This document shows positions 5,048-61,491 of a DNA stretch of 64,000 bases, piece by piece. The position numbers were made by a program, and so were the translations under genes. Origin of the DNA: Octopus sinensis (Eukaryota); NCBI RefSeq assembly GCF_006345805.1, contig NC_043013.1, positions 11,160,001-11,224,000 on the forward strand, written 5' to 3'. The notes beneath the pieces were generated by a model, which worked only from the letters and a program-made list of their open reading frames with translations, was not told the DNA's origin and ran no database searches. How positions within the stretch are numbered: the first letter of the stretch is position 1; the number at the start of each line of letters is the position of its first letter.

Positions 5048-5453
5048 TTTCTTTTCTACTCTAGTCACAAGGCCCGAAATTTGGGGGCAGGCGCGTCAGT
5101 GGATTACGTCGACCCAAGTACGCAACTAGTACTTAATTTATAGACCCCGAAAGGAGAAAGGCAAAGTCGGCCTCGACGGAATTTGAACTCCGGACGTAAA
5201 GACAGACGAAATACCTATTTCTATTTCTTTACTACTCACAATGGGCTAAATACAGAGAGGACAAACAAGGAAAGACAAATGGATTAAGTCGATTACATTG
5301 ACCCCAGTGTGTAACTGGTACTTATTTTATCGACCCTGAAAGGATGAAAAGTAAAGTCAACTTCGGTGGAATTTGAACTCAGAACGTAATGGCAGACGAA
5401 ATACCGCTAAGAATTTCACCCGACGTGCTAACGATTCTGCCAGCTCGCCGCCT
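5048..5453 (-). mobile_element. SINE family A dimer (head-core-tail1-core-tail2)
   Basis: Two core units joined at gaaatacc|tatttc (5215/5216). The central domain tentatively resembles the Meta domain of MetaSINEs. Confidence 0.85.
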
Positions 5454-5478
5454 TATATTTATGTACCTATCAACTATA

Positions 5479-17144: not shown

Positions 17145-17370
17145 TATTTCTTTACTGCCCACAAGGGGCTAAACACAGAGGGGACAAACAAGGACAGACA
17201 AACGGATTAAGTCGATTACATCGACCCCAGTGCGTAACTGGTACTTAATTTATCGACCCCGAAAGGATGAAAGGCAAAGTCGACCTCGGCGGAATTTGAA
17301 CTCAGAACGTAACGGCAGGCGAAATACGGCTACGCATTTCGTCCGGCGTGCTAACGTTTCTGCCAGCTCG
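17145..17370 (-). mobile_element. Full-length SINE family A (tail 1)
   Basis: Head gagctggcagaaacgttagcacgccgg, B-box gagttcaaattcc, core, tail ...gcagtaaagaaata. Confidence 0.9.
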
Positions 17371-17669
17371 GAGTTCAAAAGACGGGCGACTGGCAGAATC
17401 ATTAACGCACCGGATAAATATGATTAACGGCATTTCGTTCGTGTTAGTCCATAGATACCCATACAAAATGAAGTCTTAAAATTTTACTTGGATAAAACGT
17501 TATGGTAAGCTTTCACAATCTGGAAGAGAAGGACAGTATGCAACTGTTAGCTACGGGTGTCGACTGCCTATTGAACGTTTCGTACGCTCAGTCAGATGTC
17601 TCCCAGCGTGTTCATGTCCAACTAAGTAGGAGTAGGCTTTGCGTTACGAAAACGCAACCAGGGGTATAT

Positions 17670-27580: not shown

Positions 27581-27980
27581 TACTCATATTATTATTCCGA
27601 AGCTATTACATGCTGATATAATTAGCAGGGATGATGTCTTGAAGTTTGGTGACAACAACTCTCCTTAAATCTCAAATATGTTTTTTTTAGGATTCTTGCA
27701 AAACACTGAATTGCAACTTTTTTGCGGGTCTCAGTTCCAATATATTTCTGTCTCATAAACAGCGGTCTGGGTATTATGCCAAGTGTATCATTTACCACGG
27801 GAATAAAATGTTTAGTCTTGCATAATCTCTTCATCTCTCTAAATTTCAGTTGAGAAGTATCAATCCTGATATTGTTTTTTTCATTTTTTTTTAGTCTCCA
27901 CTCTGTTTATTATATGATGTTGCAAAGTCTATGATCTTACATACACCGTTTGTTTCTTTTCTCATCTATAATAATATCTA

Positions 27981-28212
27981 AGGTGGCGAGCTGGTAGAAA
28001 CGTTAGCACGCCGGGCGAAATTCGTAGCTGCATTTCGTCTGTCGTTGCGTTCCGAGTTCAAATTCCGCCGAGGTTGACTTTGCCTTTCATCCTTTCGGGG
28101 TCGATAAATTAAGTACCAGTTACGCACTGGGGTCGATGTAATTGACTTAATCCCTTTGTCTGTCCTTGTTTGTTCCCTCTGTATTTAGCCCCTTGTGGGT
28201 AGTAAAGAAATA
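27981..28212 (+). mobile_element. Full-length SINE family A (tail 1)
   Basis: aggtggcgagctgg..gagttcaaattccgccgaggttgac..gtgggtagtaaagaaata. Confidence 0.92.
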
Positions 28213-28229
28213 TATAATAATATCTGATC

Positions 28230-35706: not shown

Positions 35707-37064
35707 AACAACAAACAAGATGAGGACAAATATCCGTCAAATGTAAATAATGTAAATAATGAACATTACTGATGTTGGTCTGTGCAGTTGAATTTAACAT
35801 GCAGCGTGTCTCTGTCGTGTTTGTACCCCGCTTGCTGACCACTGAGCAGAAAGAAAATTGCATCAAATCCTGTCAAGATCTCTGTCAGCGTGTCGGCTGT
35901 TGACTCATCCTTCATATCGAAGACCATCACCGTTGACGAGAATCGGGTCTACACATACGACCCTAAGGCGAAGTAACTGTCGTCACAATGGAAGAGCTCT
36001 TAATGGGCACAAGGAGTCTCAGCGCAATGAAGTACATGGTCATCGGTTTCTCTTTTTTTACATCCGTGCTATTGTGCATCGAGAATTTGGCCCCCAGGTC
36101 CGGGGTGCCAATCGAGAGTTCTACTATTTTGAAGCGTTTGACGGAGGACAGTGAGCTAAAGTGAAGCGCGAAGAATTGGCTTATTCAAAGAGCTCTCCTC
36201 ACTCGCTAGTTTCTCGCCGAAAACAACTTGATGTCGCTTCTGCACTGGCTCTATTCGCCACTTTAAGCACCTGCAGACTTTCATCTCATACCCAAGACGA
36301 AAATGCACATCAAAGGTCGCCATTTTAACACCGTTGTCAAAATCCAGACTGAATCGTACAAGTTTCTTGATTCACCTACGGAAAACGACTTTCCGGTCGG
36401 ATTCCAAAAATGGCAGGAATTCCGGGACCGGTGTATTGCGGGGCAAGGCAATTTCTTTGAAGGAGATGATGTTAAAATTTGAGTAAATAACTTATTGTTT
36501 ATAAAACGTAACTAGTCCGGGAGCATTTTCATACCACCTGGTATATGTATATGCATGTATATATATAAGAGCATGTCTATATATATGTGTGTGTATGTGT
36601 GTGTAAGTATGTATATATAAATATTTATACTTACACACACATACACATACACAAACGCATACACACACACACACAAGCCTACATTCCAGGTTTAGTTGAA
36701 GGGAAACTTACGTTATTCTACTTGTGAGACCACGCGAGATCCCAACGCCTCTTGACTAATATATGCCTGGACACCTTTGCTGGAAACTCTATAAGTTAGG
36801 TTTTCACTGTAATAGCGCGATTGAATATCTACTTTCAGAATTCAATTCGTTCATGAGCTGGAGTAAATGATTACTGAGATTTTGGAACATCAAAGACCCC
36901 AAATCAAGTGGTCCAGCTGAGGCTCATCTGGCCTTGAATATAGGTATACATACATACGTATGTATATATGCATGTATGTATGTATGTATGTATGTATGTA
37001 TGTATGTATGTATGTATGTACGTACGTATGTATGTTTGTATAATTAAACATATATTCTATTTCT

Positions 37065-37286
37065 TTTTTCAGCCATTTGACTGCGGCCATGCTGGATCAC
37101 CACCTTTAGTCGAACAAATCGAGCCCAAGACGTATTCTTTGTAAGCCTAGTACTCATTCTGTCGTTCCCTTCTACCGAACTGCTATGTGACGAGGACGTA
37201 AACACATCAACATCGGTCGTCAGGCGATGGTGTGAGTACAAACACAGACACAAATAAAAACACACACCACACACAGACTCACACTT

Positions 37287-37344
<58 letters not shown>

Positions 37345-37618
37345 CGACGGCCCTCTTTCAGTTTGTTAAGATCCAGAGCGAATCACCGAAGTTTCTTGAT
37401 ACGCTTACTTCGCTTACGGAAAACGACTTCCAGGTCGGATTCCAAAAGTGGCAGGAATTTTGGGTCCGCAGTATTACGGCGTAAGGTGACTATTTCTTCT
37501 ACCAAATCCTTTCACAAGGCTTTGATCGGCCCGAGGCTACAGTAGAAGACACTTGTCCAAGGTGCAACGCAGTAGGACTGAACCCGCCGGTACCATGTGG
37601 TTGGCATGCAAACTTCTT
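37065..37618 (-). mobile_element. SINE family B, main part (5' head resumes at 40037-40066)
   Basis: The sequence across the two halves restores aaacttctt-accacacagc.cctcctgc.cct; it also carries a mariner fragment. Confidence 0.88.
37357..37495 (+). mobile_element. Internal mariner transposase fragment inside a SINE
   Basis: Similar to 36340-36465 (acggaaaacgactt..gtcggattccaaaa.tggcaggaatt); no TIR. Confidence 0.8.
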
Positions 37619-40036
37619 TATTTCATTACATTTGCCATAAAGGCAGTACATAGAGTAAAGTGGCTTTGCGGGCTGGACGAGGACATTAATGAAATGAATG
37701 ATAATGAAAGAAAGATGATAAGGATGGGAGAAGACAAAAAGCGCCCGCCGACTTCTGCTTCTCTAAAACATTGTTCTTTAAAACCAGACACAAAACGAGG
37801 TATTAAACCTCTTACAACTTTTACAACTTTTCAATTTTTGGACTTAACAGTCCATTACAAACAACAACATAGTTCAATAATTACATCTAATATAAATACA
37901 ATACACAAAGCCCCTCCTCCCAGACCTGGCTTACACTTCCCTTAGGAATGCGCCAGCTCTAGGTAGGGGCCCCTCAAGTCGTATCTAAACATGTCCTATC
38001 AAACATAAAAAATGCATTATCACTTTTCCCTTCCTCCTCTTTCCGGACCCCCAGTCAAATATCTAGCCGCCTGCAGAGCAGACCACGTTGACAGCCGGGG
38101 AGTTCAGAAAGAAAGCGAAGTGCCTATTATCAAATGTTTGTGTCACAATTTACGACTCATCCTCAAAATAACTTGTGCTCGCATCCTCTGCCATCCTCCA
38201 AAACCTCATCGATTTCCGTGTTAGCGTTGCCCGGGTACAAGCGATATTCCTCATTGAGCTTCTCCAGCTCAGACGTCACGTCGAACTTCGTGGCCACCAC
38301 AGCTATCTGCGGAGGCCATTCGGGGTCCTGTGTGAAGGCTGAAGGTGCTCCCTTATGGTGCTTTTCTATCACCTTTTCAATCTCTCCGCCTCTATGGAAG
38401 AAGATCAATACATCGTCTTTCCCCGGGGGCTGTATATTCAATTCTTTCATTGGCGGCACAGTTCCCGCCAACGGTGTTTCTTCTGTCGGTGGCACAACCC
38501 CAACCGGCGTAGTTCCGGGACATTCCGGTACTATGTCACCGACTACCGGCAATGTCCCGTTTCTCTTTCTCTTCCTCTTTTTTTTTCTTTTCAACTGAGG
38601 GAGGGTGCGTCTCCTCCGTGGCCGGAAGATTCGCCTTTCCCTCCTCATCCCTAGGGTCCTTTAGTGAGCACCCATTGTTGCTCACCTTCTTCCTCTTTCG
38701 GCCCCTGTTTGAGGAGTCCTCCGCCACCTCAGCCGTCTTCATTCCCTCTTCTACAGGGGTCTCCCTTAACTGCTCCGGGATCTTATTTTGTTCCCGGGGA
38801 CAGTTTTTCTTTATATGGGCTGACTCCAGGCACCGATGACACCTGGGGGGCGACCCTCAAGTATCACCGGCTACCTGTGCCCGGCCATTTTCAAAAAACT
38901 GGAAAAACCAGATTGACTGATTGGGTCCAAAGGGTCTAAATTGCTTTTGACCCAACCCATACAGCCGCAGGGAGAACTTTCACATTAAGAAGCTTGGTCC
39001 CGCTGCCACCCAGATCCCGGCGGATAGACTCCTCTATCCACTCGGGTTTTATCCCGGGTGGCAGCCCGCCGATCCAAGCTTTCGTCAACCTCTTCCCATG
39101 ATACGTGGGAAGAAATAAAATTTCCTTACCCTCCAGGGGTTTACTAGCAAATTTGCGAGCCTCTTCAGGGGTGTCAAATAGCAACCACATCGTTGCATAT
39201 CTGACACCCCTGGAAATGAATTTAATTGTTGGCAAATAACTCTGCCAACTCCTTTTCAATTGCCGTCTTTTCGAATAGGCGATGGGTTCGAGTGCCTTGG
39301 AGTAGGTTTCAACACACCGTCCTATCTTCACGGTCTTTTAACCACTTTTTAGGCGGTATAATCTCCCATTCCAAAATTTTTCATTTTTTCATTGCCATGT
39401 TTCTTTTTTTTTTTTTTGAAATATATTGAAAATAAGCTTAAAAAGCGAGAAGAAAAAAGAAATCAAAAGAAAGTCACAATAAACAAGAAGGAGAAAGTCA
39501 AATAAAGTTTAGAAGAAAGTCAATAGTTCAGGAACACAGCAAAAAAATTCTTCCGGACATTCGGTACTTACTCCCGGCTAGGTTGAACCCGGACACCACA
39601 CTGGAACACAACTTCCACAAAAATTGATATACAAATTATTCATCTCGGAGGCAAAACACTCCCCCATTCAGCAGTTCTCACAATTATTAAAGTTCTTCAA
39701 AAGGCACAATACAAGCAATAATTCTCATAATTAAGTGAGAAAAATATTCACTCAACGTAAACTGAAGATGAGGATACGCCCCACCAAAAATGAATTCAAT
39801 AAATTCGGAATACACAAAAACAGCAGCCGCCAAGAGCAGGCGAAATTGTCCCAGAGCTGGGCACAATTTACTGAAAAAAAATTCGCACGCAATAAATTAT
39901 GCCCAGCTCACAACAAGCAAAATCACCTACCTCGACAACATTCTTTGTTTTTTATCTTTATTCTTTTTAGGACGGAGCTCACGTCCTCACCGTTCTGTGT
40001 CAAGAAGTCAACTCCACGACCGGAACCGGAAGCAAT
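37619..40036 (-). mobile_element. ORF1-only non-autonomous non-LTR retrotransposon (HAL1-like), about 2.4 kb
   Basis: TSD CTTCTT (37613-18, 40037-42) splitting a SINE. 5' end ATTGCTTCCGGTTCCGG; single ORF1; about 540-nt 3' UTR with no RT remnant; ends in AATAAA. Confidence 0.8.
38163..39397 (-). pseudogene. Disrupted L1/Tx1-type ORF1 protein, about 400 aa: RRM-like region, CCHC zinc knuckle, K/E-rich linker, C-terminal domain
   Basis: TKAWIGGLPPGIKPEWI; ILEGRPPR followed by CHRCLESAHIKKNC (CX2CX4HX4C at 38800-38841); several frameshifts and stops. Confidence 0.8.
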
Positions 40037-40064
40037 CTTCTTACCACACAGCACCTCCTGCACC

Positions 40065-40108
<44 letters not shown>

Positions 40109-50226: not shown

Positions 50227-50612
50227 TGATGATAATAACCAATGTATACTATGAGTTTCTTTGCCCTAGGAGTCGGGAAGACGCTCGGCAAGAAATGGAA
50301 GCAAATTTGAAAGAAGAAGAAAAAAAAGAAAAAAATAATAATGATAATAATAATAATGATGATGATAATAATAAAAATAAATTCTTTTATTGGCCATAAG
50401 GGCTGACAAAAATTAATTATAACAAAAAGGGGACAAAACAAGACGAAACGTTACAAAGGGTTTTGTCCGTTTGTAAAAAACCGTGTAGAAACAGTGTAAC
50501 AATCAAAATTTATAACAACGAAAAACTCCCAATAGTGGGAGGCGTTACGAAAGGTTCCTGGTGGATAATAATAATAATAATATAATGATAATAATAATAA
50601 TAATAATAATAA

Positions 50613-50655
<43 letters not shown>

Positions 50656-51035
50656 TAATAATGATGATGATAATAACCAATGTATACTATGAGTTTCTTT
50701 GCCCTAGGAGTCGGGAAGACGCTCGGCAAGAAATGGAAGCAAATTTGAAAGAAGAAGAAAAAAAAGAAAAAAATATAATGATAATAATAATAATGATGAT
50801 GATAATAATAAAAATAAATTCTTTTATTGGCCATAAGGGCTGACAAAAATAATTATAACAAAAAGGGGACAAAACAAGACGAAACGTTACAAAGGGTTTT
50901 GTCCGTTTGTAAAAAACCGTGTAGAAACAGTGAACAATCAAAATTTATAACAACGAAAAACTCCCAATAGTGGGAGGCGTTACGAAAGGTTCCTGGTGGA
51001 TAATAATAATAATAATAATGATAATATAATAATAA

Positions 51036-57399: not shown

Positions 57400-57968
57400 T
57401 TTGCTCTAGGCTCAAGAGCCCGAAAGTTTTAGGGAGGGGGCCGGTCGTTAAATCGATCCCAGTATGCAACTGGTACTTGATTTATCGACCCCGAAAAGAT
57501 GAAAGCCAAAGTCGACCTCGGCGGAACTTGAACGTAAGGGAAGACGAAATAACCTATTTCTTTACTACCCACAAGGGGCTAAACACAGAGAAGACAAACA
57601 AGTACAGACAAACGGATTAAGTCGATTTTATCGACCCCAGTGCGTAACTGGTACTTATTTAATCGACCCCGAAAGGATGAAAGGCACAGTCGACCTCGGC
57701 GGAATTTGAACTCAGAACCGTAAAGACAGACGAAATACCTATTTCTTTACTCCCACACGAGGCTAAACACAGAGAGGACAAACAAATACAGAGAAACGGA
57801 TTAAGTCGATTATATTGACCCCAGTGCGTAACTGATACTTATTAATCGACCCCGAAAGGAGGAGGGGCAAAGTCGACCTAGGCGGAATTTGAACTCAGAA
57901 CGTAACGGCAGACGAAATACGGCTACGCATTTCGCCCGGCGTGCTAACGATTCTGCCAGCTCGCCACC
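57400..57968 (-). mobile_element. SINE family A trimer (head-core-tail1-core-tail1-core-tail2)
   Basis: Junctions at 57554/55 and 57739/40; the middle unit is 185 bp. Confidence 0.9.
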
Positions 57969-58116
57969 TTACATCCATCGAATTATAATGCTTTGTCATT
58001 GGAAAAGTTACGTTCGAATCGAAGAATAGTCAGTGATCTCAATGAAGGTGTTCCTCACCAAAATATGGAGTTATCCGAGAAATGTTTAGTAAGATGTGAA
58101 AAGGAAAATGAACATA

Positions 58117-58326
58117 AGGCGGCGAGCTTGTAGAAACGTTAGCGGTATTTCGTCAGTTGTTATGTCCTGAGTTCAAATTCCGCCGAGGTCGACTTTTCCT
58201 TTCATCCTTTCGGGGATCGGTGAATTAAGTACCAGTTACGCACTGGGGTCGATCTTATCGACTTAATCCCTTTGTCTGACATTGTTTGTCCTCTCTATGT
58301 TTAGCCCCTTGTGGGCAATAAAGAAT
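58117..58326 (+). mobile_element. SINE family A (tail 1)
   Basis: aggcggcgagc..gccccttgtgggcaataaagaa. Confidence 0.88.
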
Positions 58327-58428
58327 TAAGATGTGAAAATGAAATATAATATAAGTACTAACTTTATTAATTATTTAATGTGTATATACATTTTTGGGGT
58401 GACACTCTATGTTTGTTTGTATGTGTGT

Positions 58429-59888: not shown

Positions 59889-60145
59889 AATTTGAACTCA
59901 GAACGTAGCGGCAAACGAAATACCTATTTCTTTACTGCCCACACAGAGAGGACAAACAAGGACAGACAAACGGATTAAATCGATTACATCGACCCCAGTG
60001 CGTAACTGGTACTTAATTTATCGACCCCGAAAGGATGCAAGGCAAAGTTGATCTCGGCGGAATTTGAACTCAGAACTTGACGGCAGACGAAATACCGCTA
60101 AGCATTTCGTCCGGCGTGCTAACGTTTCTACCAGCTCACCGCCTT
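59889..60145 (-). mobile_element. SINE family A with the start of a second headless unit
   Basis: Same gaaatacc|tatttc junction at 59924/25. Confidence 0.88.
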
Positions 60146-61491
60146 TGTAGTTAACATCTTTTAAAGTTAAGGTATTTAAAGCTAAGGTTTGCATTTTTCC
60201 AAAGCATAAGGCTCATGCATAAATTTTGAAAAATATCCGCCAACAGGATCGTGTGTTGAAACCGGGTGTTGAAACATATATTGTTATATATCGGGATAGC
60301 AATTTCTTTCTCTGTTTTCCAAATAAACACCTGCACTATACACTCCTTTACTTCAACTTTATTAATGTTCTTACTTTAATGACTTTGTCTGAAATCTTTC
60401 ACCAAACATCCTGTGACCTCTTCGGCGACTCTCCTTCCCACATGTCGCCTGTTCTGTTTAGTCCATTCTGTCTTCCAGACAGTGTGGATCTACACACACA
60501 CACACACACAATCTCACACATACACACACACACGCACAGAGGCGCACGCACATACACACGCGTACACACACGCGTGAATACATAACTACATACATAGACG
60601 CAGACATACATTTTTAGACATATTCTATATTTTGAAACATGTATTAACTGTTTTAGAATCTAGAAATGACATTTAAAGGAAATAACTCGAATAATAGCTA
60701 AACCAAAATTAAAAAAATTAAATCAATGCATTTAGGATTGGAACGACCATTTTAGAGTTTGTTGGTGGGAAGGAACTGACATGTTCCTGTGTATGTGTAC
60801 ATTGTGTGTGTGTGGGGGGGGGGTGTATGTGCGGTAGAGAGAGTGGGAAAAAGGCATAAAACCCAAAGAAGTGAAACTGGTAATCTGACACTGTAGAAGA
60901 AAACGACGAAGGACACATGAAATATGGCAATGGTAAAGGGTGAGGTAGGATGTAGAAAGATTGAAACGACAGAAGATGAAAATTGAGAGAGAGAAAGAGA
61001 GAGAGTGTGTGTGTGTGTGTGTGTGGAAGAGGTTGAGACGGGAAGGGCGAGAGAAAGGAGGGCAATTTAGTTAGAAGGAAGATCAAGGGATGCTGAAGAG
61101 ATGAAGAGGGAGTAAGTAAGAGAAAAATATGATAGAAAAACTAAAGAAAGATGGGGGGAAAGAGAGAGAAAGAGAAAGAAAGAAAGAAGAAAGAAAGAAA
61201 GAAAGAAATGAGGAAGAGGAAAAGATGGAGAGAGAAAGTGTAAGAAAAAGGACATATGGCTCTGACGGAAGATCAAGGGATGCTGAAGAGCTGGAGAGGG
61301 TGTAAGTAAGAGAATAAAGAAATTGATGAACTAAAGAAAGATTGAAACGGGGAGATAGATGGAGAGAGTGAGAGAGAGAGAGGGCAAGAGAGTGAAAGAG
61401 GAATAAAGAAAGAAAGAAAGAGAGAAGTTTAAAGAAAAATGAGTATGGTAAAATAGAGAGACAACCACCAAAATGACAGTGATACGCTTTA

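What the first reader, a model, noticed from the sequence alone, without database searches (positions are those of the whole stretch)
37619..40036. Full-length ORF1-only (half-L1, HAL1-like) retrotransposon
Seen: both ends are fixed by a split SINE and the TSD CTTCTT. The pre-insertion site TCTT/A fits an L1-type endonuclease nick. The element has a 5' end with tandem CTTCCGG/TTCCGG, a 5' UTR of about 640 nt, one ORF1 with an RRM-like region and CX2CX4HX4C knuckle, and a 3' UTR of about 540 nt ending in AATAAA with no EN/RT trace. Known: HAL1 elements encode only ORF1 and borrow ORF2 in trans (Bao & Jurka 2010, mainly mammals). Inference: an independent invertebrate origin of a protein-coding non-autonomous retroelement that supplies its own RNA chaperone.
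Basis: partly seen in the sequence, partly recalled or inferred. Interest (0 to 1): 0.8.

Follow-up and report, generated by a model that had tools for sequence, protein, structure and literature searches.

The report
Dead ORF1-only octopus LINE derivative
This is an old, mutated copy of an octopus jumping gene that kept only the RNA-binding gene (ORF1) of an L1/Tx1-type LINE, has no reverse transcriptase of its own, carries the same 3' hairpin tail as the complete LINEs, and sits at one precise spot inside a tRNA-derived SINE.

Summary
The insertion is real. A 2,411-bp element (minus strand, 37619-40029) splits a tRNA-derived SINE. Its target-site duplication is 13 bp (11/13 identical), not 6.

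It is not an intact ORF1. The coding region has 6 frameshifts and 3 in-frame stops.

Its protein is homologous to ORF1 of octopod LINEs whose ORF2 carries an APE endonuclease and zf-RVT. The modelled fold is two RRM-like domains plus a CCHC knuckle. No EN/RT trace exists in the element.

Its 3' end carries the same hairpin plus AATAAA tail as those LINEs, as LINE fragments in the window and as a second SINE family.

Two more copies in Octopus sinensis lack ORF2 but are 3'-truncated, so the full 2.4-kb structure is seen only here. Ka/Ks between deep lineages is 0.26, so the ORF was long under selection.

A separate ORF1-only unit in O. vulgaris has an intact ORF and its own TSD, so the class exists in octopods.

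All three family copies abut the same nucleotide of the SINE head, which suggests site-specific integration as in the Tx1 clade.

It works like HAL1 or HeT-A but belongs to neither family. It is a new variant of a known kind, of moderate interest.

The parts
37619..40029 (-). The inserted element, 2,411 bp: 5'UTR, decayed ORF1, 3'UTR.
   Evidence: Bounded by the split SINE and the 13-bp duplication. It is the only copy in the window.
40030..40042 (-). 5'-side copy of the target-site duplication (sense AAGAAGATTGCTT).
   Evidence: Aligns to the same SINE columns as 37606-37618; 11/13 identical.
37606..37618 (-). 3'-side copy of the target-site duplication (sense AAGAAGTTTGCAT).
   Evidence: The first AAGAAG could also be read as part of the element's AATAAAGAAG-type tail (microhomology; inference).
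40030..40067 (-). First ~37 nt (tRNA-like head, with an apparent A-box-like segment read by eye) of the host SINE, in the same orientation as the element.
   Evidence: Alignment with SINE copies. The same head abuts the 5' end of the L001 and L002 copies.
37053..37618 (-). Remainder of the host SINE: B-box-like region (read by eye), body, internal microsatellite and 3' domain. It also carries an extra ~110-nt insert at 37365-37490.
   Evidence: blastn to other SINE copies in the window and in L002.
39399..40029 (-). 5'UTR, 631 nt. It starts CCGGTTCCGG (ETS-like TTCCGG motifs). The first ~240 nt are unrelated to the 5'UTR start of the two O. sinensis copies.
   Evidence: An inverted repeat GAGCTGGGCA...TGCCCAGCTC lies at about 39854-39909.
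38163..39398 (-). Decayed ORF1 (about 410 conceptual codons) with 6 frameshifts and 3 in-frame stops.
   Evidence: Homologous to P0001 and, more distantly, to ORF1 of octopod LINEs.
38852..39320 (-). Two RRM-like beta-alpha-beta-beta-alpha-beta units. Coordinates are approximate, mapped from P0001 residues 27-98 and 103-182.
   Evidence: AlphaFold2 model of P0001: pLDDT 80.9, about 90 or higher in most 10-residue blocks of the core. Foldseek top hits are tandem-RRM proteins SFPQ, NONO and hnRNP A1 UP1, with probability 1.0 but low TM-scores.
38800..38841 (-). CX2CX4HX4C zinc knuckle (CHRCLESAHIKKNC).
   Evidence: The family profile matches retroviral NC and ZCCHC knuckles in the PDB. zf-CCHC Pfam hits occur in relatives.
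38163..38500 (-). C-terminal domain of about 100 aa (DDVLIFFHRGGEIEKV...YRLYPG), conserved in all three copies, with no detectable homologue.
   Evidence: WIN vs L001 Ka/Ks is 0.41 over 41 codons. It lies in a different frame from the knuckle in every copy, probably through indels in an A-run.
37619..38162 (-). 3'UTR, 544 nt, with no EN/RT remnant. Only the first ~65 nt are shared with the L002 copy.
37619..37660 (-). 3' tail: CTCTATGTA-CTGCCTTTATGGCAAATGTAATGAAATAA. This is a 4-bp hairpin (UGCC / GGCA, loop UUUAU) followed by an AAUAAA-like end. Complete LINEs, LINE fragments and a SINE share it.
   Evidence: The motif GCCYTTRTGGSNAAT occurs 4 times in the window against 0.09 expected. Alignment A3. 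Pair counts: 90.6% paired, 3 of 4 pairs with compensatory changes, 0/500 shuffles reach the covariation score.

Best explanation
This is an old, inactivated copy of a non-autonomous derivative of an octopod L1/Tx1-group LINE. The derivative retains the 5'UTR, ORF1 and the LINE-type 3' tail, and has lost ORF2.

Proposed mechanism:
1. The element RNA, probably coated in cis by its own ORF1p (two RRM-like domains plus a CCHC knuckle), ends in a short hairpin followed by an AAUAAA-like sequence.
2. The ORF2 protein (APE endonuclease plus RT plus zf-RVT) of a related autonomous LINE recognises that tail in trans.
3. That protein nicks the target and copies the RNA by target-primed reverse transcription, leaving a 13-bp duplication.
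4. The target is one particular position (GGT^AAGAAG) in the tRNA-like head of an abundant SINE. The partner is therefore probably sequence-specific, as many Tx1-clade LINEs are.

Shown here: the insertion and its TSD, ORF1 homology to ORF1 of complete LINEs, the absence of ORF2, the shared tail with covariation, past purifying selection, and the same junction in three copies.

Inferred: trans-mobilisation, cis use of ORF1p, site specificity of the partner, and the partner's identity.
For: - Split SINE and 13-bp TSD.
- ORF1 relatives: phmmer against 1.84 billion representatives gave 47 hits. All of the 10 looked up that carry a source name are from octopods.
- Three relatives are directly followed by ORF2: L003 has Exo_endo_phos and zf-RVT, and L005 and L013 match its EN, RT and C-terminal pieces.
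- No EN/RT in the element, or in the window by tblastn at E<=1e-3 with those ORF2 pieces.
- The 3' tail motif and hairpin are shared with those LINEs, with two truncated LINE ends at 50.4-50.9 kb and with a SINE at 58.3 kb.
- Two further copies in O. sinensis (L002 80.7% identical, L001 72.8%) have no ORF2. L002 is collinear with the window copy through the stop codon plus ~65 nt.
- Ka/Ks: L001 vs WIN 0.26 (CI 0.17-0.37), L001 vs L002 0.27, at Ks about 0.95.
- A parallel ORF1-only unit in O. vulgaris (L004) has an intact 389-aa ORF, the same tail and its own 14-bp TSD.
- Site specificity: all three copies join the SINE after ...AAGNAGNTTGCTT. Their upstream flanks are unrelated.
- The three SINE heads are each closer to the SINE consensus (4-5 of 35 differences) than most pairs of heads are to each other (5-9 of 35).
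- WIN's first 240 nt are unrelated to the L001/L002 5' end (z 1.1-1.6, against z 28 for L001 vs L002), yet the junction is the same.
- Precedent: Tx1-clade target specificity, shared by their non-autonomous passengers (PMC4494074). A related octopus LINE sits in (ATT)n in 3 of 3 insertions seen.
Against: - Only the window copy has both ends. L001 and L002 lose homology at window ~38500 and ~38098, and no SINE remainder lies downstream of them. So neither recurrence of the whole 2.4-kb unit nor a second 3' junction is shown.
- No autonomous LINE with a closely related ORF1 or the same SINE target was found. The nearest ORF1 attached to an ORF2 is about 24% identical.
- The direct 3'-tail similarity of WIN to the LINEs is weak. 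It is significant only to L004 and at the level of the short motif and hairpin.
- All copies seen are dead, so activity as a family rests on Ka/Ks from three sequences.
- The hairpin is 4 bp, judged on 8 sequences.
Confidence: 0.72

Rival explanations
1. The SINE head is part of the mobile unit rather than the target. One ancestral element landed in a SINE. Its descendants then carried the first 37 nt of the SINE as a 5' extension (5' transduction), or the whole SINE-insert-SINE composite moved. The shared junction would then be inherited and would not show site specificity.
For: - All three copies begin at SINE nucleotide 1 and share the same junction.
- L001 and L002 show no SINE remainder downstream.
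- WIN and L002 share the variant AAGAAGTTTGCTT.
Against: - WIN's 5'-terminal 240 nt are unrelated to those of L001 and L002, yet the junction is at the identical nucleotide. Inheritance would need a replacement whose left edge coincides exactly with the junction.
- The heads look like independent SINE copies.
- In the window the SINE continues seamlessly after the 3' end with an 11/13 duplication. The SINE parts are only ~15% diverged, while the family's deep Ks is ~0.95.
- T5-T8 runs in the 5'UTR argue against Pol III transcription from the SINE head.
Confidence: 0.2
2. This is a one-off internal deletion. A complete LINE inserted here and lost ORF2 during or after integration. No propagating ORF1-only family exists.
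For: - The complete ORF2-less structure with both ends is documented only at this locus.
- The 479 bp of 3'UTR downstream of window 38098 have no counterpart in L001 or L002.
Against: - L002 shares the ORF1 stop and the first ~65 nt of 3'UTR, and is not followed by EN/RT.
- L001 has no ORF2 either.
- No ORF2 remnant of any length exists in 544 nt.
- Another octopus ORF1-only unit with its own TSD shows that such units do retrotranspose.
Confidence: 0.1
3. These are retrocopies or duplicates of a domesticated, ORF1-derived host gene (an L1TD1-like exaptation) rather than a transposable element family.
For: - Strong purifying selection between lineages.
- NCBI annotates P0001 as a single-exon gene.
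- Only three copies of this family were found.
Against: - The RNA ends in the LINE-type hairpin tail rather than an ordinary poly(A) site.
- Three copies sit at the same SINE nucleotide.
- Every copy seen, including P0001's own locus, is disrupted. P0001 stops at an A-run frameshift before the conserved C-terminal domain.
- The locus lies inside another repeat.
Confidence: 0.06
4. The three copies arose by DNA-level segmental duplication of one ancient locus.
For: The same SINE-element junction is present in all copies.
Against: - Sequence upstream of SINE nucleotide 1 is unrelated in the three loci.
- The flanks are not collinear.
Confidence: 0.03

Closest known systems
HAL1 (half-L1) of mammals (Smit 1999; Bao & Jurka 2010; summarised in PMC5753468)
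   Same: A non-autonomous LINE derivative that keeps the 5'UTR, ORF1 and 3'UTR, lacks ORF2, and must borrow ORF2p in trans. HAL1 arose repeatedly. At least two unrelated ORF1-only lineages are likewise seen in octopods (the window family, and L004/L006).
   Different: - HAL1 derives from mammalian L1 with the coiled-coil/RRM/CTD ORF1p (Pfam Transposase_22) and an A-rich tail. It integrates at loose TT/AAAA sites.
- Here ORF1p has two RRM-like domains plus a CCHC knuckle, with no Transposase_22 hit.
- The tail is a hairpin plus AAUAAA without poly(A).
- All three copies occupy one SINE position.
HeT-A of Drosophila telomeres (PMC5537684)
   Same: An invertebrate non-LTR element that encodes only a Gag/ORF1 protein with CCHC knuckles, lacks pol, depends on RT from another element, and integrates at a specific kind of site.
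   Different: HeT-A belongs to the Jockey clade (from general knowledge), targets chromosome ends and has a host function in telomere maintenance. Nothing of that kind is indicated here.
Tx1-clade target-specific LINEs and their passengers: Tx1L in Tx1D, Keno in U2, Kibi/Koshi in microsatellites, Tx1-Mar with SINEU in Mariner-N4_AMi (PMC4494074)
   Same: - The related LINEs have an APE-type endonuclease, with ORF1 and ORF2 separate.
- Insertion is into a defined position of another repeat.
- Non-autonomous elements share the partner's target.
- A related octopus LINE is (ATT)n-specific.
   Different: - The passenger here is protein-coding (ORF1), not a SINE.
- The target is the head of a tRNA-derived SINE.
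- Clade assignment by RT phylogeny was not done.
Stringent-type LINE/SINE pairs that share a 3' stem-loop tail (Kajikawa & Okada 2002, cited in PMC4494074)
   Same: A conserved 3' hairpin and terminal motif are shared by the autonomous LINEs, a SINE family (window 58.1-58.33 kb) and the ORF1-only elements.
   Different: Recognition of this tail by the octopus ORF2p has not been tested. The hairpin is only 4 bp.

Membership tests
HAL1 (mammalian half-L1) | Encodes ORF1 only; no ORF2 (EN/RT). | tested here: met
   No EN/RT similarity by tblastn at E<=10 or by Pfam in the three 3'UTR frames. There are only 544 nt between the ORF1 stop and the 3' end.
HAL1 (mammalian half-L1) | ORF1p of the L1 type II kind (coiled coil, RRM, CTD; Pfam Transposase_22). 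| tested here: not met
   Pfam gives no Transposase_22 hit for the window pieces or P0001. The model shows two RRM-like units plus a CCHC knuckle. The PDB sequence search matches only the knuckle.
HAL1 (mammalian half-L1) | A-rich or poly(A) 3' end and loose L1 EN target (TT/AAAA). | tested here: not met
   The element ends ...GCCTTTATGGCAAATGTAATGAAATAA with no A-run. All three copies lie at the same SINE position.
HAL1-like family in general (propagating ORF2-less unit) | Several copies with the same ORF2-less structure and different TSDs. | tested here: inconclusive
   Three copies lie at three loci, none with ORF2, but two are 3'-truncated. The criterion is met for a different octopus ORF1-only unit, L004, which has a 14-bp TSD.
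HAL1-like family in general (propagating ORF2-less unit) | ORF1 under purifying selection during amplification. | tested here: met
   Ka/Ks is 0.26-0.27 between the L001 lineage and the WIN/L002 lineage. WIN vs L002 gives 0.64, mostly post-insertion decay. Only three sequences were compared.
L1/Tx1-group LINE (as source of the ORF1) | ORF1 homologous to the ORF1 of elements whose ORF2 has an APE endonuclease, RT and C-terminal zf-RVT. | tested here: met
   P0003 (E 3.6e-14), P0005 and P0020 are followed by ORF2. L003 has Exo_endo_phos and zf-RVT. L005 and L013 match at 50-61%.
Tx1 clade | Placement of the partner's RT inside the Tx1 clade by phylogeny. | not tested
   No RT tree or RTclass1 was run. 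O. vulgaris is reported to hold 13 recently active 'L1-Tx1' families (PMC13282606).
Tx1 clade | Sequence-specific integration into a repeat. | tested here: inconclusive
   3 of 3 copies lie at one SINE nucleotide, with unrelated outer flanks and unrelated 5' termini. Only one 3' junction is preserved.
Non-LTR retrotransposon insertion by TPRT | Target-site duplication flanking a unit with a defined 3' end. | tested here: met
   13-bp duplication, 11/13 identical, inside a SINE whose joined halves align to intact copies.
Stringent LINE/SINE tail sharing | 3' terminal sequence and structure shared with an autonomous LINE. | tested here: met
   Motif count is 4 against 0.09 expected in the window. 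See alignment A3. The hairpin has compensatory changes in 3 of 4 pairs.
Processed pseudogene of a host mRNA | Poly(A) tail and an intron-bearing parent gene elsewhere. | tested here: not met
   There is no poly(A). The only close relatives are two other disrupted, single-exon copies. Absence of a parent gene could not be tested across a whole genome.

The most novel reading that the evidence does not exclude
Octopods may harbour long-lived 'half-Tx1' lineages. These would be protein-coding, ORF2-less LINE derivatives that arose more than once and kept ORF1 under purifying selection over a synonymous divergence of about 1. They would be mobilised through a shared 3' hairpin tail. In this family they would be aimed at one nucleotide position in the tRNA-like head of a SINE. 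That would make them the first ORF1-only passengers of a sequence-specific LINE, and it would imply that ORF1p supplied in cis matters for trans-mobilisation.
Probability: 0.4. Interest if true: 0.62.

Novelty: new variant of a known kind. Interest (0 to 1): 0.5.

Why it matters
ORF1-only LINE derivatives are known from mammals (HAL1) and, in another clade, from fly telomeres (HeT-A). An independent case in cephalopods would differ in three ways: a different ORF1p architecture, a structured tail shared with the LINEs, and apparent site specificity.

Such a case would show that keeping one's own RNA chaperone while parasitising another element's reverse transcriptase is a recurrent strategy. 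It would also give a natural system for asking whether ORF1p must act in cis.

It adds to the picture of octopus genomes, where LINEs and SINEs are unusually abundant and L1-Tx1 families are recently active (PMC13282606).

The particular copy in this window is dead and has no functional consequence of its own.

Tried and rejected
- Pfam on the three open pieces of the window ORF gave no hit.
- Rfam on 36.9-40.3 kb gave only sub-threshold microsatellite artefacts.
- A word-indexed protein search with the repaired translation found only two O. sinensis proteins.
- The same tool with a 21-sequence alignment was swamped by low-complexity candidates and added nothing.
- Two exact-pattern scans of the metagenome contigs for conserved ORF stretches found nothing. 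No eukaryotic genome collection could be searched by similarity, so copies could not be collected genome-wide.
- I first misread a BLAST hit as a second copy in L001. The file held both L001 and L002, and the hit was the L002 copy.
- The C-terminal ~100-aa domain has no detectable similarity to the C-terminal tails of the related ORF1 proteins or to anything else.
- I considered that the 479-bp distal 3'UTR was 3'-transduced flank, because L002 lacks it. I rejected this because its end carries the family tail and is significantly similar to the 3' end of the L004 unit.
- I considered a non-autonomous LTR element with tRNA-like LTRs (Helenus; PMC10886601) and rejected it. The two ends share only 13 bp.
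- Segmental duplication was rejected on the unrelated flanks.
Full report
**1. What is in the sequence**

The feature lies on the minus strand. Its left flank (to 37618) and right flank (from 40030) are two halves of one copy of an abundant composite SINE. I call this SINE-A.

- Joined in silico, the two flanks align without a gap across the junction to at least four other copies in the window, at 78-82% identity.
- In a multiple alignment both flanks contain the same 13 SINE columns: ATGCAAACTTCTT at 37606-37618 and AAGCAATCTTCTT at 40030-40042.
- The element is 37619-40029, 2,411 bp.
- SINE-A has a tRNA-like head. I read A-box-like and B-box-like segments by eye; no tRNA or Rfam scan of SINE-A copies was run. 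Its sense strand is the strand of the element. The insertion lies between the two boxes.

**2. Anatomy**

- The 5'UTR is 631 nt and starts CCGGTTCCGG.
- The coding region runs from the ATG at 39398 to the stop at 38163-38165, but it is not open.
- Against the 281-codon open reading frame of the paralogue P0001 it shows 6 indels that are not multiples of three and 3 in-frame stops. The longest open pieces are 131 and 161 aa.
- The knuckle CHRCLESAHIKKNC lies at 38841-38800.
- The 3'UTR is 544 nt and ends ...GCCTTTATGGCAAATGTAATGAAATAA with no poly(A).
- Nothing in the element resembles an endonuclease or reverse transcriptase. This was tested by tblastn with octopus LINE ORF2 pieces at E<=10 and by Pfam on the three 3'UTR frames.
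- This copy is a pseudogene.

**3. What the protein is**

- Pfam finds nothing in the window pieces.
- A word-indexed search found only two Octopus sinensis proteins. P0001 (LOC115225585, 281 aa) is one. P0002 is a chimeric gene model whose first exon is another copy.
- An exhaustive phmmer search of 1.84 billion representatives with P0001 gave 47 hits at E<=1e-3, at about 24-35% identity except the partial match to P0002. All of the 10 looked up that carry a source name are from octopods: O. sinensis, O. bimaculoides, O. vulgaris and Argonauta hians.
- The hits share a conserved core ending in VxVEGRxPxCxxCGxxGHxxxxCP.
- An AlphaFold2 model of P0001 built on that alignment is confident. Mean pLDDT is 80.9, and most 10-residue blocks of the core are at about 90 or above. 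It shows two beta-alpha-beta-beta-alpha-beta units followed by the knuckle.
- Foldseek against the PDB returns tandem-RRM proteins (SFPQ, NONO, hnRNP A1 UP1) at probability 1.0. TM-scores are low, as expected when domain orientation differs.
- At sequence level only the knuckle matches solved structures.
It is not the mammalian L1 ORF1p architecture.

**4. Link to LINEs**

Three of the relatives are directly followed by an ORF2:

- L003 (O. sinensis, P0003) has an Exo_endo_phos ORF and a zf-RVT ORF.
- L005 (O. vulgaris, P0005) is a head-to-tail array.
- L013 (Argonauta hians, P0020) has a perfect 16-bp TSD.

So the ORF is an ORF1 of the L1/Tx1 group. RT phylogeny was not done.

Two other relatives, L004 and L006 (O. 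vulgaris, P0009 and P0012), have no ORF2. L004 has all of the following:

- an intact 389-aa ORF;
- a 3'UTR of about 510 nt;
- the family tail;
- a 14-bp direct repeat (13/14) exactly at its ends, where 0.01 is expected by chance.

ORF1-only units that retrotranspose therefore exist in octopods, independently of the window family.

**5. The 3' tail**

- The last ~40 nt of the window element match a motif found at the 3' ends of L003, L005, L013 and L004.
- The same motif ends two 5'-truncated LINE fragments in the window (50.4 and 50.8 kb, both inside (ATT)n) and a second SINE family (58.1-58.33 kb).
- The motif GCCYTTRTGGSNAAT occurs 4 times in the window against 0.09 expected.
- It folds into a 4-bp hairpin. 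90.6% of cells pair, 3 of 4 pairs carry compensatory changes, and no shuffle out of 500 reaches the covariation score.
- This is the usual signature of LINE, SINE and passenger sharing a tail that the LINE's RT recognises. The recognition itself is inferred.
- It also shows that the distal 479 bp of 3'UTR, which L002 lacks, is genuine element sequence and not transduced flank.

**6. The family**

Two more copies were recovered, both in O. sinensis. L002 is 80.7% identical over 1.7 kb and L001 is 72.8%.

- Neither is followed by ORF2.
- L002 is collinear with the window copy through the stop codon and ~65 nt of 3'UTR, and then breaks.
- L001 breaks inside the C-terminal domain.
- The complete 2.4-kb structure with both junctions is therefore documented only in the window.

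Ka/Ks in the L001 frame:

| Comparison | Ka/Ks | Note |
|---|---|---|
| L001 vs WIN | 0.26 (CI 0.17-0.37) | Ks about 0.95 |
| L001 vs L002 | 0.27 | Ks about 0.95 |
| WIN vs L002 | 0.64 (CI 0.41-1.01) | mostly neutral decay after insertion |

The ORF was maintained by selection while the lineages diverged.

A conserved ~100-aa C-terminal domain has no detectable relative. In each copy it lies out of frame with the knuckle, next to an A-run.

**7. The unexpected point**

All three copies abut the first ~37 nt of SINE-A at the same nucleotide (...AAGNAGNTTGCTT|CC), in the same orientation. Four observations bear on why:

- Upstream of SINE nucleotide 1 the three loci are unrelated, which argues against DNA-level duplication.
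- The heads differ from the SINE consensus at 4-5 of 35 positions and from each other at 5-9, as independent SINE copies would.
- The first ~240 nt of the window element are unrelated to the 5' end shared by L001 and L002 (z 1.1-1.6 against z 28), although by ORF sequence L002 is the window copy's nearest relative.
- Two unrelated 5' termini joined to the SINE at the identical nucleotide are easier to explain by a fixed pair of target nicks than by inheritance of one junction.

Many Tx1-clade LINEs are target-specific, and their passengers share the target (PMC4494074). The related octopus LINE sits in (ATT)n in 3 of 3 insertions seen.

I therefore favour site-specific integration, at about 55-60%. 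The alternative, that the head travels with the element, is not excluded. No SINE remainder lies downstream of the two truncated copies.

The target AAGAAG can pair with the AAAGAAG-like end of the family tail, which may contribute to site choice. This is inference.

**8. Comparison with known systems**

- It works like HAL1: ORF1 only, with ORF2 borrowed. HAL1 arose several times in mammals (PMC5753468).
- It also works like HeT-A, which is gag only and lacks pol (PMC5537684).
- It is a member of neither. The ORF1p architecture, the tail and the target all differ from HAL1. By ORF1 homology it belongs to the L1/Tx1 group, whereas HeT-A is, from general knowledge, a Jockey-clade element.
- The claim of a first invertebrate origin is therefore overstated.
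- The combination of a protein-coding passenger, a structured LINE tail and a SINE-head target was not found described in the papers searched.

**9. Verdict**

This is a real, old, dead ORF1-only derivative of an octopod L1/Tx1-group LINE, inserted by TPRT into a SINE. It is a new variant of a known kind and of moderate interest.

The decisive step could not be run here. It is a genome-wide census of copies and junctions in the octopus assemblies, together with identification of the autonomous partner.

Noticed in passing
window 50372-51000 (minus strand): Two tandem ~190-bp 5'-truncated 3' ends of an L1/Tx1-like LINE, each embedded in (ATT)n. They belong to the same family as the full-length (ATT)n-flanked LINE in O. 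sinensis locus L003, which suggests a microsatellite-specific LINE.
   Followed up: partly
window 58100-58330 (+); other copies near 5221-5454, 17145-17370, 27972-28219, 57549-57974, 59919-60146: A second SINE family that looks tRNA-derived by eye. Its 3' tail (CTCTATGTTTAGCCCCTTGTGGGCAATAAAGAA) is the same hairpin plus AATAAA tail as that of the LINEs and the ORF1-only elements, so it is probably mobilised by the same LINE group.
   Followed up: partly
L004 7920-9652 (O. vulgaris OX597833.1): A 1.7-kb ORF1-only unit with an intact 389-aa ORF, the family tail and a 14-bp TSD GCTGGGTTCG[T/G]CTA, inserted next to a palindromic (foldback-like) repeat and (TA)n. It is possibly a young or active half-LINE. 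L006 holds a diverged, 3'-truncated relative inside a similar foldback repeat.
   Followed up: partly
L005 4274-17024 (O. vulgaris OX597840.1): A complete LINE (ORF1 plus EN, RT and C-terminal region) present as a head-to-tail tandem array with a period of about 5.28 kb.
   Followed up: no
L013 7790-13245 (Argonauta hians): A full LINE with a 527-aa ORF1 and an ORF2, flanked by a perfect 16-bp TSD TCTTCAACTTATGTTT. It looks recently inserted.
   Followed up: no
window 38163-38500 (minus strand); L002 ~17300-17620: A conserved ~100-aa C-terminal domain of the ORF (DDVLIFFHRGGEIEKVIEKHHKGAP...YRLYPG) with no homologue in any search. It lies out of frame with the knuckle in all three copies, next to an A-run. 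Either independent indels or a programmed frameshift could explain this.
   Followed up: partly
window 37365-37490 and 36334-36457: The host SINE copy carries an extra ~110-nt insert that has a 75%-identical paralogue 1 kb away. It is an unidentified small repeat.
   Followed up: no
window ~39854-39909 (minus-strand 5'UTR): An inverted repeat GAGCTGGGCA...TGCCCAGCTC (10-bp stem) lies in the part of the 5'UTR that is unique to the window copy.
   Followed up: no
L001 11520-11600: A cluster of NRF1-like (GCGCATGCGC) and ETS-like (ACTTCCGG / CCGGAAGT) motifs. It resembles the 5' ends of the LINE-like elements and is possibly the promoter of another element or gene.
   Followed up: no
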